DNA of 63,372 nucleotides, counting the filler, from Olpidium bornovanus S191 (taxonomy: Eukaryota > Fungi > Olpidiomycota), in the NCBI GenBank assembly GCA_017911155.1. It is 29 parts of 29 records of this genome, joined end to end, with 100 filler letters (N's around TTAATTAATTAA, not from the genome) between each part and the next. Parts side by side here need not be neighbours in the genome. Positions count along the whole stretch, not along the records: positions 51,159 to 53,571 come from JAEFCI010011665.1; 28 more parts are not named here. One strand, 5' to 3'. Numbering within the stretch: position 1 is the first letter of the stretch; each line of letters opens with the position of its first letter. Both the position numbers and the translations under genes were made by a program. The notes under the pieces were generated by a model. That model was not told where the DNA came from, did no database searches, and worked only from the letters and a program-made list of their open reading frames with translations. This document shows positions 51,826 to 53,571 of this stretch, piece by piece.

Positions 51826-53571
51826 TCAGGCGGGATTGTCGTCCGGCTCAGGTGCCGCCGCCTTGCACCTCAACGCCTCGTCGTCCAGCCGGCGCTCGAC
51901 CTCCAGGACGAGCTTCCGGCAGTCCTCCCGCGTGGGCCCGACGAACGCGATGCCGAACGTGCCCAGCTCGGCGACCGCGCCGTGCATGTACAGCAGGATT
52001 CCCGCGTCGCGGACGCGGCCGGCGGAGCAGGGCTCGGCGCCGCCGCGCGCCAGGGACAGGTCGGCCAGCATTTCGTGGAGGTCCGCGGGCGTGAAGACGG
52101 TGTAGTCCGCCTTGCCGAAGTGGTCGAAGGCGATGTAGTGGCCGTGGCTGACGCCGGTCCCGCCGCCGCCGCCGCCCGCCTCCGCCGGGCGGGGGTCGTG
52201 CGAGCGCTCGAGCAGCTTGAGCATCATGAGCGGGCAGGTGGTGCCCGTCGTGCGGAGGTTGATCTCCAGCGCGTCGAGCAGGTACGAAGTCCCGTCCCCG
52301 GACCCGGACGGCGTGGCGATGAAATCGACCCCGAAGTGGCCCACCTCCCCGCGGCGGGCCAGGGCGCGGCCGACGGCGCGGGCGTGCTCCTCGAGCCGGG
52401 CCCGGTAGGCTTCGCCGGCGGGGAACTCGCACCCGCCGTACGCGTGGCCGTCCAGGATCTGCTCGTGCGTGGACAGGACGACGACGTCCGCGTCGCCTCC
52501 GCCGCCGCCGCCGCCGCCGCCGCAGGTCGGCGCGTGCTCCTTGATGTACGCTTGCACCGAAGGCGTCGTCTGGCCGTCGGATTTCGGGACGAAGAGCTCG
52601 AACACCGCTCCGATGGACTCGATGGCCCGGCGGAAGGACGGCCAGTTCTCCTCCTCCGACTGGAACTGCATTTCGCCGAACGCATCCAGCACGAGCCTCT
52701 CGACCGATCCGCTGTCGGCCCCGCCGTCCCGGGCGGCCAGCGAAAACGCTGCGGAGAGGTCGACGAGGCCGTTGCCCAGGCCGGCGAAGCCGTCCTCGAG
52801 CTTGACCATCCCCTTGACCGCGACGCGGTGGCGGGACTTGGCGGCGGCGGGGGCGGGCGCGAGGAACCTCGGGTTCGACGCGGCGGACGCGGCGGTCGCG
52901 GCGAGGACGGCGGCGACGCGCTCGGCGAGCCTGCCGACGTCCCTCTCGGCCTCGAAGGTGCCCGGCACGTGGGGGACGCCGGCGTCGGCGAAGACGGCGC
53001 GCGACCCGGACTTCGTGCCCCAGCGCAGCAGCTCGGGCTCCGCGCCCTTGAGCTCGAGGCCGAGGGCGCGCGCGGCGAGCGCCTCATAGCGCGTGCGGCG
53101 GTAGACCTCGAGGCGGGCGGGGCGGACGGCGGGGTCTGCGCGCCTCCTCTCGTCGACGAGGCGGCGCACGCGGCCGACGAGGCGCGGCTTCTCGACGAAC
53201 TTCCGGGCCAGGCAGCGGTCGGGCCTGCCGTCGTCGACGCTGACCATGATCAGCCTCGTCCCGAGCAGGGCGCCGGCGCCCTCGACGGTGGGCGGCAGCA
53301 GGGACAGGTGGTAGGCGACGAGGTCGGGGTCGACGGGCACCGAGGTCACGAAGATCACGCGGGTGCCGGGGCGGGCAAGGTGCAGTATGCGGTGCAGGAA
53401 GCGCTCCTCGTACTGGTGCAGGCCGCGGACCTTGCGGAGCTCGCGCGGGTCGAACGAGCAGGACGGGAGGACGACGATGTCCTGGTTCTCGGCCTCCCAG
53501 TAGGGAGGGCTGTGGCAGCCTGGTCCCGGGTGGAGGAGGAGCACGCGGGAGTGGGGGGGGGTGGGGGCCGC
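51826..53571 (-). CDS. PGM1-related ATP-grasp peptide-ligase-like protein (pre-ATP-grasp, ATP-grasp and PGM1 C-terminal regions), intronless, 5'-truncated
   Basis: IVVLPSCSFDPRELRKVRGLHQYEERFL; RVIFVTSVPVDPDLVAYHLSLLP; LLRWGTKSGSRAVFADAGVPH; MVKLEDGFAGLGNG; VVLSTHEQILDG..YGGCEFPAGEAYR; GHFGVDFI; ALEINLRTTGTTCP; MHGAVAELGTFG. Confidence 0.85.
   Translation of the reverse strand, partial: AAPTPPHSRVLLLHPGPGCHSPPYWEAENQDIVVLPSCSFDPRELRKVRGLHQYEERFLHRILHLARPGTRVIFVTSVPVDPDLVAYHLSLLPPTVEGAGALLGTRLIMVSVDDGRPDRCLARKFVEKPRLVGRVRRLVDERRRADPAVRPARLEVYRRTRYEALAARALGLELKGAEPELLRWGTKSGSRAVFADAGVPHVPGTFEAERDVGRLAERVAAVLAATAASAASNPRFLAPAPAAAKSRHRVAVKGMVKLEDGFAGLGNGLVDLSAAFSLAARDGGADSGSVERLVLDAFGEMQFQSEEENWPSFRRAIESIGAVFELFVPKSDGQTTPSVQAYIKEHAPTCGGGGGGGGGDADVVVLSTHEQILDGHAYGGCEFPAGEAYRARLEEHARAVGRALARRGEVGHFGVDFIATPSGSGDGTSYLLDALEINLRTTGTTCPLMMLKLLERSHDPRPAEAGGGGGGTGVSHGHYIAFDHFGKADYTVFTPADLHEMLADLSLARGGAEPCSAGRVRDAGILLYMHGAVAELGTFGIAFVGPTREDCRKLVLEVERRLDDEALRCKAAAPEPDDNPA

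What the first reader, a model, noticed from the sequence alone, without database searches (positions are those of the whole stretch)
51826..53571. Bacterial-type PGM1-related ATP-grasp ligase in a fungal genome: candidate horizontal acquisition and unknown peptide-ligation chemistry
Seen: a 572-aa or longer intronless ORF, in a genome where the other recognisable conserved genes here are split by introns. Its motifs (IVVLPS.S.D.RELRK, YEERFL, WGTKSGSR.VF, KL.DGF.G.GN, THEQIL.G..Y.GC.FPA, GHFGVDFI, EINLR..GTT.P) match the PGM1-related ATP-grasp family common in cyanobacteria and actinobacteria. Known: Streptomyces Pgm1 ligates a non-proteinogenic amino acid onto ribosomal peptides in pheganomycin biosynthesis. 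Seen: the ORF carries host-style low-complexity insertions ([29 protein letters not shown]) and shares its contig with the poly-G/poly-A flanks typical of this assembly, which argues for integration rather than contamination. Inference: an ameliorated HGT giving the fungus an uncharacterised amide-bond-forming enzyme. The eukaryotic IQCH family is a distant relative and is the main alternative origin.
Basis: partly seen in the sequence, partly recalled or inferred. Interest (0 to 1): 0.8.

Follow-up and report, generated by a model that had tools for sequence, protein, structure and literature searches.

The report
Chytrid-type ATP-grasp ligase gene, not recent HGT
The reading frame is a real, expressed gene for a PGM1/BesA-type ATP-grasp amide-bond ligase, but it sits inside a clade of eukaryotic genes (chytrid fungi, a diatom, diplonemids, other protists), so it is an inherited gene of unknown substrate and not a recent bacterial import.

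Summary

**Family.** The protein is a full-length PGM1/BesA-type ATP-grasp ligase. It matches BesA 8yi6 at E 1e-20, and the AF2 model has pLDDT 90. The Lys plus Gly-rich loop and the D…ExNxR metal/catalytic residues are intact.

**HGT reading not supported.**
- The nearest relatives are chytrid proteins (Spizellomyces, Gaertneriomyces, Phlyctochytrium; 40-41% BLASTP identity, branch support 100/99).
- Next come Clydaea, Kappamyces and Quaeritorhiza, a diatom, metagenome contigs with eukaryotic neighbour genes, and diplonemids.
- All rows labelled eukaryotic form one clade (99/96), and no labelled bacterium falls inside it.
- Placing the window protein outside the eukaryotes is rejected (AU p 1.4e-6). 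Fungal monophyly is not rejected (p 0.41).

**Not intronless.**
- A contig from a probable RNA run is colinear from 51829 to 53519.
- It then leaves the genome exactly at a polypyrimidine-CAG acceptor and continues into an in-frame ATG.
- This gives a product of about 570 aa.
- The three closest orthologues each carry one short 5' phase-1 intron.

**Other relatives.** Cyanobacterial "PGM1-related" proteins are the closest bacterial relatives, so a bacterial origin would be ancient and shared. Animal IQCH matches only at fold level (14-17% identity).

Substrate and function are unknown.

The parts
53520..53571 (-). Probable 3' end of a 5'-proximal intron. It is 71% pyrimidine and ends in CAG. 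Exon 1, with the start codon, lies beyond the piece edge.
   Evidence: The X1 contig (probable RNA run) matches down from 53519. Upstream of that it carries different letters that hold an in-frame ATG.
51829..53519 (-). Terminal coding exon of the ATP-grasp ligase gene. It holds 563 full codons plus 2 bases of a split Ser codon, and has no internal intron.
   Evidence: ORF. The 1768-nt X1 contig is colinear with it, with 5 substitutions and 12 gap letters in Gly-codon repeats. GC3 is 95.9%.
51826..51828 (-). Stop codon.
53038..53490 (-). N-terminal pre-ATP-grasp domain, approximate bounds. It holds the IVVLPS...RELRK and YEERFL motifs.
   Evidence: Pfam PreAtp-grasp gives a weak hit of 18 bits. 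BesA alignment stretch 1 covers it. The AF2 model is confident here.
52198..53037 (-). ATP-grasp nucleotide-binding and catalytic core, approximate bounds.
   Evidence: Pfam PF24923 scores 28.7 bits against a cut-off of 27. Foldseek finds BesA, PGM1 and biotin carboxylases.
52771..52806 (-). VKLEDGFAGLGN: the phosphate-binding Lys (K239 in 563-residue numbering, codon 52801-52803) followed by the Gly-rich loop.
   Evidence: K239 and G246 are invariant, and G248 and N249 nearly invariant, in the 81-sequence alignment.
52417..52473 (-). STHEQIL.G..Y.GC.FPA block, a family-specific motif in the substrate pocket region.
   Evidence: It aligns with the corresponding block of BesA 8yi6. Q353 and G362 are invariant.
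52318..52341 (-). GHFGVDFI, with the invariant Asp D398 (codon 52324-52326). This is the inferred first Mg2+ ligand.
   Evidence: The role is inferred from the general ATP-grasp motif pattern.
52231..52272 (-). ALEINLRTTGTTCP: the E418-x-N420-x-R422 metal-binding and catalytic motif (52252-52266).
   Evidence: E418, N420 and R422 are nearly invariant in 81 sequences. The block aligns to the same block of BesA.
52816..52890 (-). Lineage-specific Ala/Pro-rich insertion (ASAASNPRFLAPAPAAAK...).
   Evidence: It is absent from all nine homologues in alignment A1. pLDDT dips to about 73.
52486..52536 (-). Lineage-specific poly-Gly insertion (G9), encoded by a CGC/GCC triplet array.
   Evidence: pLDDT is below 50 at residues 334-336.
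52141..52188 (-). Second Gly-rich stretch (EAGGGGGGTG), encoded by a CCG array. It lies in a loop that varies in length among homologues.
   Evidence: pLDDT is below 50 at residues 448-453.
51853..52155 (-). C-terminal domain equivalent to PGM1_C, approximate bounds.
   Evidence: Pfam finds PGM1_C in the orthologues (P0002 22.7 bits). It finds no PGM1_C in the window protein at E up to 1. The AF2 model aligns over its whole length with BesA and PGM1.
51246..51825 (.). G/A-rich spacer of 60% GC with A32, C23 and G33 homopolymers. It is the presumed 3' UTR of the ligase gene plus the upstream region of the left gene.
   Evidence: A low-depth X1 contig covers 51560-49. Contigs break at the homopolymers.
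51159..51245 (-). First 29 codons of a neighbouring, much more highly expressed gene (ATG at 51243-51245). It is cut by the piece edge.
   Evidence: Depth is 199 in X1. The junction at 51246 is not supported by the other assemblies.

Best explanation
**What it is.** This is the main exon of a nuclear gene of a zoosporic-fungus-type eukaryote. The gene is transcribed and spliced, and encodes a protein of about 570 aa. The protein is a three-domain ATP-grasp carboxylate-amine ligase of the PGM1/BesA ('peptide ligase PGM1-related', Pfam ATP-grasp_IQCH) family.

**Where it came from.**
- It belongs to a eukaryotic subfamily found in several chytrid orders, a centric diatom, diplonemids, a heterolobosean and a ciliate.
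- Within that subfamily it is sister to the Spizellomyces, Gaertneriomyces and Phlyctochytrium orthologues.
- So it was inherited within its lineage. It then drifted to the host's extreme GC3 and gained Gly/Ala/Pro-rich loop insertions.

**How it most likely works (inferred from the family, not shown here).**
1. Mg-ATP binds between the central and C-terminal domains. The contacts are K239 with the Gly-rich loop, and D398, E418 and N420.
2. A substrate carboxylate is phosphorylated to an acyl-phosphate.
3. An amine attacks the acyl-phosphate to give an amide, with R422 stabilising the transition state.

**Likely substrates.** They are probably an amino acid and an amino acid or peptide. Two observations suggest an acidic amino-acid or N-acyl/gamma-glutamyl type product. 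BesA is annotated as an L-propargylglycine--L-glutamate ligase. The diplonemid members are fused to an AstE/AspA-type deacylase.
For: **Identity**
- Pfam PF24923 scores above its cut-off.
- NCBIfam BesA scores 86.7 bits.
- PDB BesA 8yi6 matches at E 9.6e-21, with the motif blocks aligned.
- The AF2 model has pLDDT 90.2 and pTM 0.90.
- Foldseek finds BesA at 5e-26 and PGM1 3wvq/3wvr at about 1e-14.
- K239 and D398 are invariant and E418, N420 and R422 nearly invariant in 81 sequences.

**Eukaryotic descent**
- The best hits are chytrid proteins at 40-41% BLASTP identity (46% by HMMER).
- More chytrids appear among the hits: Clydaea, Lobulomyces, Kappamyces, Quaeritorhiza.
- Unnamed clade members lie on contigs with eukaryotic neighbour genes.
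- Percolomonas, Blepharisma, and MMETSP and EukProt members are present. So is a diatom.
- Trees: window + Spizellomycetales-type 100/99; + Clydaea 95/92; a 21-row clade 100/99; all labelled eukaryotes 99/96.
- AU tests.
- The orthologues sit on scaffolds over 1 Mb, each with one short phase-1 intron.

**Expression and splicing**
-.
- The spliced N-terminus has 12 residues before YWE. Spizellomyces has 14 and Gaertneriomyces 12.
- The sequence is held in runs of the same coded organism from four studies.
Against: - No activity, substrate or localisation is known for any member of the eukaryotic clade.
- The substrate guess rests on two distant characterised relatives (23-24% identity in the structure-based alignments) and on one domain fusion.
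- The Pfam scores of the window protein itself are marginal (28.7 against a cut-off of 27), and PGM1_C is not detected by the HMM.
- The splice is seen in one assembled contig of a run whose RNA nature is itself guessed. Exon 1 is not on the piece.
- Two large raw RNA runs labelled with the same organism gave zero reads on the piece. Either strain divergence or the attribution of this 2.4-kb contig to that organism is therefore open.
- Many rows of the 'eukaryotic' clade carry no label.
- The root, and hence the direction of any ancient transfer, is not established.
Confidence: 0.8

Rival explanations
1. One reading: a lineage-specific horizontal transfer of a bacterial PGM1-related gene into this fungus, later ameliorated.
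For: - The family is numerically dominated by bacteria (Actinomycetota, Cyanobacteriota).
- Cyanobacterial proteins are 33% identical to the window protein, and 37-41% identical to its chytrid relative.
- The large exon has no internal intron.
Against: - The nearest relatives are chytrid proteins, with support 100/99. The next are further chytrids and other eukaryotes.
- Forcing the window protein outside the eukaryotes costs 106 lnL units (AU p 1.4e-6).
- The gene is spliced at its 5' end, and the orthologues carry introns on megabase scaffolds.
Confidence: 0.03
2. On deep origin only. The whole eukaryotic clade descends from one ancient transfer of a cyanobacterial-type gene, by plastid-related or other HGT. 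It then spread by vertical descent and possibly by eukaryote-to-eukaryote transfer, for example between algae and their chytrid parasites. It was not present in the last eukaryotic common ancestor.
For: - The eukaryotic clade attaches next to short-branched cyanobacterial sequences.
- The Kappamyces protein is 37-41% identical to hundreds of cyanobacterial proteins, nearly as close as to other chytrids.
- A diatom and MMETSP sequences sit inside the 21-row clade together with chytrids.
- The distribution among eukaryotes is patchy.
Against: - The tree is unrooted and the backbone is weakly resolved.
- The holders include non-photosynthetic lineages from several supergroups (Fungi, Euglenozoa, Heterolobosea, Ciliophora). 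That fits an old eukaryotic gene with many losses equally well.
- Animal IQCH shares the full three-domain fold and could be the divergent animal branch of the same old gene.
Confidence: 0.4
3. The contig is real eukaryotic DNA but belongs to a different organism from the one the assembly is named for, such as a co-cultured or parasitic chytrid.
For: - The contig is only 2.4 kb.
- No contig in the runs examined bridges the ligase gene to the left-hand gene, and both contigs diverge at 51246.
- Two large raw RNA runs with the same species label gave no reads.
- Part of the sequence also turns up in soil and root metagenomes.
Against: - Runs of the same coded organism from four separate studies hold the sequence, up to 73% of sampled words.
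- GC3 of the ligase (96%) and of the neighbouring gene fragment (83%) are both very high.
- The tool itself calls the zero-read runs 'no test'.
Confidence: 0.1
4. It is the fungal orthologue of animal IQCH, the sperm-flagellum IQ-motif protein.
For: - Pfam names the shared domain after IQCH.
- The AF2 model aligns over residues 9-553 with the C-terminal halves of human, mouse and zebrafish IQCH (E about 1e-24, TM 0.68).
- All named eukaryotic holders make flagella or cilia.
Against: - Identity is only 14-17%, against 33-41% to cyanobacterial proteins.
- There is no IQ motif and no equivalent of the roughly 450-residue IQCH N-terminal half.
- No protein with an IQCH-type architecture was recognised among the long members that were scanned.
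Confidence: 0.05

Closest known systems
BesA, L-propargylglycine--L-glutamate ligase of Streptomyces cattleya (PDB 8yi6; NCBIfam NF042917)
   Same: - It is the best solved-structure match by sequence (E 9.6e-21) and by fold (E 5e-26, TM by target 0.79).
- It has the same three-domain layout.
- It shares the THEQ/HDQ...Y.GC.FPA, FGVDF and EINLR blocks.
   Different: - Identity is only 23-24%.
- The score of 86.7 bits is far below the equivalog cut-off of 750.
- BesA acts in a bacterial alkyne-amino-acid gene cluster. The window gene is a spliced eukaryotic gene with no such context.
PGM1, pheganomycin peptide ligase of Streptomyces cirratus (PDB 3wvq/3wvr)
   Same: - Same fold over the whole length (Foldseek E about 1e-14, TM by target 0.71-0.74).
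- Same Pfam domain set in the orthologues (pre-ATP-grasp, ATP-grasp, PGM1_C).
   Different: - 16-19% identity.
- PGM1 joins a non-proteinogenic amino acid to ribosomal peptides encoded nearby. No precursor-peptide or cluster context exists here, or next to the cyanobacterial homologue examined.
Cyanobacterial 'peptide ligase PGM1-related protein / carboxylate-amine ligase' (uncharacterised)
   Same: - It is the closest bacterial subfamily: 33% identity to the window protein and 37-41% to the chytrid Kappamyces protein, over the full length.
- It has the same motifs.
- It is a stand-alone gene.
   Different: - The cyanobacterial rows fall outside the eukaryotic clade in the trees.
- It lacks the Gly/Ala-rich insertions.
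- Its function is also unknown.
Chytrid orthologues, e.g. Spizellomyces punctatus SPPG_06388 (uncharacterised)
   Same: - 40-41% BLASTP identity (46% by HMMER) over 96% of the length.
- Sister group with support 100/99.
- Similar N-terminal length.
- One short 5'-proximal phase-1 intron followed by one long exon.
   Different: - The intron lies 13 codons further downstream in the three orthologues.
- They lack the low-complexity insertions and the extreme GC3.
- The window branch is 2-3 times longer.
Animal IQCH (IQ motif-containing protein H)
   Same: The same three-domain ATP-grasp fold occupies its C-terminal half. Pfam groups both under PF24923.
   Different: - 14-17% identity.
- IQCH is about 1030-1070 aa, with an IQ calmodulin-binding motif and a long N-terminal region that are absent here.
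- No paper in the library connects IQCH with an ATP-grasp activity.

Membership tests
PGM1/BesA-related ATP-grasp ligases (Pfam PF24923 ATP-grasp_IQCH with PF18604 PreAtp-grasp and PF18105 PGM1_C) | Sequence match to the family model at or above the curated cut-off. | tested here: met
   PF24923 scores 28.7 bits against a cut-off of 27, which is marginal. Direct homology to family members is strong: 1e-110 to 1e-60.
PGM1/BesA-related ATP-grasp ligases (Pfam PF24923 ATP-grasp_IQCH with PF18604 PreAtp-grasp and PF18105 PGM1_C) | Pre-ATP-grasp and PGM1_C accessory domains detected by their own models. | tested here: inconclusive
   PreAtp-grasp scores 18 bits, below its 27.5 cut-off, and PGM1_C gives no hit on the window protein. 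Orthologues pass PGM1_C. The AF2 model aligns with BesA and PGM1 through both regions.
PGM1/BesA-related ATP-grasp ligases (Pfam PF24923 ATP-grasp_IQCH with PF18604 PreAtp-grasp and PF18105 PGM1_C) | Three-domain fold of PGM1/BesA. | tested here: met
   AF2 pLDDT 90.2, pTM 0.90. Foldseek finds 8yi6 at E 5e-26 and 3wvq/3wvr at E about 1e-14, over about 550 columns.
PGM1/BesA-related ATP-grasp ligases (Pfam PF24923 ATP-grasp_IQCH with PF18604 PreAtp-grasp and PF18105 PGM1_C) | ATP-grasp nucleotide and metal residues: Lys plus Gly-rich loop, an acidic residue, and ExNxR. | tested here: met
   K239, G246/G248/N249, D398, E418, N420 and R422 are present, and invariant or nearly so in 81 sequences. 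Assignment of their roles rests on general knowledge of the ATP-grasp superfamily.
PGM1/BesA-related ATP-grasp ligases (Pfam PF24923 ATP-grasp_IQCH with PF18604 PreAtp-grasp and PF18105 PGM1_C) | ATP-dependent amide-bond formation. | not testable with these tools
   Needs an enzyme assay.
BesA equivalog (NCBIfam NF042917) | Score at or above the equivalog cut-off (750 bits). | tested here: not met
   86.7 bits.
PGM1-type RiPP-tailoring ligase in a biosynthetic cluster | Adjacent precursor-peptide or biosynthetic genes. | tested here: not met
   The piece holds only this gene and the start of an unrelated gene. The chytrid neighbours are ordinary eukaryotic genes. The cyanobacterial homologue lies beside rbcLXS, with no cluster.
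IQCH (animal IQ motif-containing protein H) | IQ calmodulin-binding motif and a long N-terminal region ahead of the ATP-grasp half. | tested here: not met
   There is no IQ hit at E up to 1. The product is about 570 aa, with 12 residues before the conserved core. The fold match is to IQCH residues of about 446-1012 only, at 14-17% identity.
IQCH (animal IQ motif-containing protein H) | Phylogenetic grouping with IQCH sequences. | not tested
   No IQCH sequence could be obtained for a tree.
Recent bacterium-to-fungus horizontal transfer | The gene nests among bacterial sequences, away from homologues of related eukaryotes. | tested here: not met
   It is sister to chytrid proteins at 100/99, inside a 99/96 clade whose labelled members are all eukaryotes. 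The alternative is rejected at AU p 1.4e-6.
Recent bacterium-to-fungus horizontal transfer | Absence of introns and of host-like sequence features. | tested here: not met
   There is a 5' splice at 53519/53520. GC3 is 96% and host-style inserts are present.

The most novel reading that the evidence does not exclude
The chytrid/diatom/diplonemid/heterolobosean/ciliate clade may be a so far unstudied eukaryotic amide-bond ligase that is kept only in lineages that build flagella or cilia.

- Within fungi, it surfaced only in zoosporic groups.
- It would be functionally parallel to the ATP-grasp half of the sperm-flagellum protein IQCH.
- It would add an amino-acid tag to a protein or small molecule.
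- In diplonemids it would be fused to its own 'eraser', an AstE/AspA-type deacylase. This would resemble the tubulin TTLL ligase and CCP peptidase pair.
Probability: 0.12. Interest if true: 0.7.

Novelty: new member of a known kind. Interest (0 to 1): 0.35.

Why it matters
As posed, a bacterial enzyme newly captured by a fungus, the finding does not hold, so it should not count as an HGT case.

What remains is modest but real. The PGM1/BesA-type ligase family has a coherent eukaryotic branch, with intact catalytic residues, for which no function is known in any organism. Its animal fold-relative IQCH is needed for sperm flagella, yet no paper in the searched library discusses IQCH as an enzyme.

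Spizellomyces punctatus carries a clear orthologue. To my knowledge it can be genetically transformed, so the function could be tested there directly.

Tried and rejected
- **Profile search:** the word-based search with an alignment of eukaryotic members returned only 13 hits and added little.
- **AU test on 98 rows:** it did not finish in two runs. I repeated it on 44 rows.
- **IQCH in the tree:** I could not obtain an IQCH sequence, so only fold comparison was possible. In afdb_clusters the organisms were masked.
- **Literature:** Iyer et al. 2009 (PMC3268129) is not held. No paper holds both IQCH and ATP-grasp. No BesA structure paper was found. The IQCH 'ancient gene' paper says nothing on the domain.
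- **Unnamed outer-clade members:** P0116 has no contig on record, and P0075 and P0060 lie on single-gene contigs of about 2 kb that do not reveal the domain of life.
- **Raw RNA reads:** two runs of 2026 gave zero reads, which is no test.
- **Left-hand divergence at 51246 as a splice:** rejected. There is no AG on the minus strand, and the same divergence occurs in a probable DNA run.
- **Shared intron position with the orthologues:** rejected. Both introns are phase 1, but they lie 13 codons apart.
- **The 599-aa ORF on the + strand:** dismissed as a shadow of a frame with 96% GC3.
- **RNA genes:** no Rfam family or tRNA on the piece.
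Full report
**1. What is on the piece**

The piece (51159-53571) holds one long open frame on the minus strand. 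It runs from the piece edge at 53571 to a stop at 51826-51828, a total of 582 codons.

Coding GC is about 74% and GC3 is 95.9%. This explains the equally long 'shadow' ORF on the plus strand.

Downstream of the stop lies a spacer of 60% GC with A32, C23 and G33 homopolymers. At the left edge are the first 29 codons of another minus-strand gene. No tRNA or Rfam family is present.

**2. Expression and gene structure**

Runs of one coded organism from four separate studies hold the sequence, with up to 73% of sampled words.

In one of them (kind given as 'RNA?'), a 1768-nt contig is colinear with 51829-53519. It differs by five substitutions and 12 gap letters in the Gly-codon repeats, so the large exon has no internal intron.

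- At 53519/53520 the contig leaves the genome. On the minus strand this point follows a 71%-pyrimidine tract ending in CAG.
- The contig's own upstream letters read ...CCCC ATG ACG ACG GGA ACG GAA A. These join in frame to GC TGC CAC..., giving MTTGTE-S-CHSPPYWE.
- This leaves 12 residues ahead of the conserved YWE. Spizellomyces has 14 and Gaertneriomyces 12.
- I therefore read 53520-53571 as the end of a phase-1 intron, and the product as about 570 aa. The GTG 'start' is not the start.
- This rests on one assembled contig. Two large raw-read RNA runs with the same species label gave no reads at all, which the tool itself rates as no test.

The three closest orthologues each have a single 61-69-nt phase-1 intron at the identical site (...DQ|D), on scaffolds of more than 1 Mb. 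The window gene lacks that intron. Its own intron lies 13 codons upstream. So 'intronless' is not a mark of foreign origin here.

**3. What the protein is**

- **Profile libraries.** Pfam gives ATP-grasp_IQCH just above its cut-off and a weak PreAtp-grasp hit. NCBIfam gives BesA at 86.7 bits, far below the equivalog cut-off.
- **Solved structures by sequence.** The only solved relative found by sequence is BesA (8yi6, E 9.6e-21). The THEQ...Y.GC.FPA, FGVDF and EINLR blocks align.
- **Model.** An AlphaFold model built on 81 homologues is confident (pLDDT 90.2, pTM 0.90). It dips only at the low-complexity inserts.
- **Fold search.** Foldseek finds BesA (5e-26), another Streptomyces ATP-grasp peptide ligase (8ynd), PGM1 (3wvq/3wvr, about 1e-14), and then biotin-carboxylase-type ATP-grasp enzymes.
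- **Catalytic residues.** K239 and the Gly-rich loop, D398, E418, N420 and R422 are present, and invariant or nearly so across 81 sequences. By the general ATP-grasp pattern (Lys plus Gly loop for the phosphates; acidic residue and ExN for Mg2+; Arg for catalysis), the enzyme looks competent.
- **Inserts.** The Gly-, Ala- and Pro-rich stretches are lineage-specific loop insertions, encoded by triplet arrays.

**4. Where it comes from**

Word-based and exhaustive HMMER searches agree. The best hit is Spizellomyces punctatus SPPG_06388 (E 1e-110; 41% identity by BLASTP, 46% by HMMER). Gaertneriomyces and Phlyctochytrium follow.

Cluster look-ups and contig contexts identified further relatives.

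| Relative | Evidence |
|---|---|
| Clydaea, Lobulomyces | named proteins |
| Kappamyces, Quaeritorhiza | named proteins |
| Metagenome contigs P0050, P0091, P0059 | neighbours unmistakably eukaryotic: cohesin loader, RPC5, Atg4, COG5, THOC2, a split AsnRS |
| Diplonemids Hemistasia, Diplonema | |
| Percolomonas, Blepharisma, MMETSP and EukProt transcripts | |
| Centric diatom Cyclostephanos | |

Taxonomy look-ups put the named fungi in Chytridiales, Lobulomycetales, Rhizophydiales and Quaeritorhizaceae, besides the Spizellomyces group. No Dikarya or other non-flagellated fungus surfaced among the named hits.

Trees:

| Tree | Result |
|---|---|
| FastTree, 188 rows | same core as the others |
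| Quick IQ-TREE, 88 and 98 rows | same core as the others |
| Careful IQ-TREE, LG+C20 PMSF, 44 rows | window + three Spizellomyces-type proteins 100/99 |
| | + Clydaea 95/92 |
| | 21-row clade with the other chytrids, the diatom and eukaryote-context contigs 100/99 |
| | + diplonemids 96/88 |
| | all rows labelled eukaryotic in one 33-row clade 99/96, no labelled bacterium inside |

Cyanobacteria, a Saprospiraceae sequence and Mycobacteriales lie outside that clade.

AU tests:
- Holding the seven fungal rows together costs 1.6 lnL (p 0.41, not rejected).
- Holding the eukaryotes together without the window protein costs 106 lnL (p 1.4e-6).

The gene is part of a broad fungal and eukaryotic set, not a private bacterial import.

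The window branch is 2-3 times longer than its sisters, and its amino-acid make-up is skewed. This fits GC-driven drift.

**5. Deep origin**

The eukaryotic clade attaches near short-branched cyanobacterial proteins. These are ubiquitous, stand-alone and uncharacterised. An ancient cyanobacterial-type donor is therefore plausible.

The tree is unrooted, however, and the backbone is weak. The holders also span several eukaryotic supergroups. I rate 'ancient transfer' against 'old eukaryotic gene with losses' as open, at about 0.4 for the former.

**6. IQCH**

The model aligns over nearly its whole length with the C-terminal halves of human, mouse and zebrafish IQCH (E about 1e-24, TM 0.68). Identity is only 14-17%. 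The window protein has no IQ motif and no long N-terminal region.

It is a fold-level relative and not an orthologue. I could not place IQCH in the tree. No paper in the library links IQCH to an ATP-grasp domain. The IQCH papers deal with calmodulin binding and sperm flagella.

**7. How it probably works**

Shown:
- the fold;
- the intact ATP and Mg2+ binding residues and catalytic residues;
- expression.

Inferred from the family:
- formation of an acyl-phosphate on a substrate carboxylate;
- capture of that intermediate by an amine to give an amide.

Weak clues to substrate:
- BesA is annotated as an L-propargylglycine--L-glutamate ligase.
- From my own knowledge of the family, PGM1 joins an amino-acid carboxylate to peptide N-termini.
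- The diplonemid members and one unnamed relative carry a C-terminal AstE/AspA-type deacylase domain. This hints at an acidic amino-acid or N-acyl type product that can be removed again.
- Other family members are fused to WD40 propellers or to a second ATP-grasp module.

**8. Verdict**

The family assignment is right. The HGT interpretation is not supported.

The gene is a new, compositionally extreme member of an uncharacterised eukaryotic branch of a known enzyme family. Interest is moderate to low as posed. The residual interest lies in the unknown function of this eukaryotic branch and its possible link with flagellated cells. All named holders make flagella or cilia. That is a weak test, since most protists do.

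Noticed in passing
window 51159-51246: This is the start of a second minus-strand gene (ATG at 51243-51245, first 29 codons), with about 8 times the contig depth of the ligase. A probable-RNA contig and a probable-DNA contig both diverge from the window at 51246, with no splice signal there. The join between this gene and the rest of the piece may therefore be a mis-assembly, a repeat boundary or a structural variant.
   Followed up: partly
window 51466-51497 and 51762-51817: There is an A32 run, and a C23 run directly followed by a G33 run, which together form a perfect hairpin-forming pair. The C/G pair starts 9 bases (51818-51826) below the stop codon's low end. Contigs of other runs break at these runs. 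It is unclear whether they are real or sequencing or assembly products.
   Followed up: no
window 51872-51873, 52650, 52709, 53222: All four codons that differ between the window and the probable-RNA contig change the amino acid: L567E, E308K, G288E and P117L in 581-residue numbering. All lie in poorly conserved stretches, and there are no silent differences. These could be strain differences or errors in one assembly.
   Followed up: partly
P0015, P0194, P0049 (C-terminal ~300 residues): The diplonemid members (Hemistasia, Diplonema) and one unnamed relative fuse the ligase to an AstE/AspA (succinylglutamate desuccinylase/aspartoacylase) catalytic domain. This may be a writer-eraser pair.
   Followed up: partly
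P0085, P0093, P0136, P0170; P0183: Other family members carry C-terminal WD40 beta-propellers. P0183 (1231 aa) carries a second ATP-grasp module of the L-amino-acid-ligase type.
   Followed up: no
L005 4349-5707 and 6899-8257: There are two tandem copies of the ligase gene, each 452 aa, each followed by an unannotated gene. They lie on a 53-kb metagenome scaffold with eukaryotic neighbours (RCC1, THOC2, PDI).
   Followed up: no
L001 6064-6125, L009 3058-3126, L010 3133-3193: The Spizellomyces, Gaertneriomyces and Phlyctochytrium orthologues share one phase-1 intron of 61-69 nt at exactly the same codon (...DQ|D...). The Gaertneriomyces intron appears to begin GC and not GT.
   Followed up: partly
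L008 4004-8599: In a cyanobacterial contig the homologue sits next to, and divergent from, the rbcL-rbcX-rbcS operon. It is a stand-alone gene with no biosynthetic cluster.
   Followed up: no
P0050 residues 1-20: One eukaryote-context member begins with a hydrophobic stretch that looks like a signal peptide. The window protein and the chytrid orthologues lack it.
   Followed up: no
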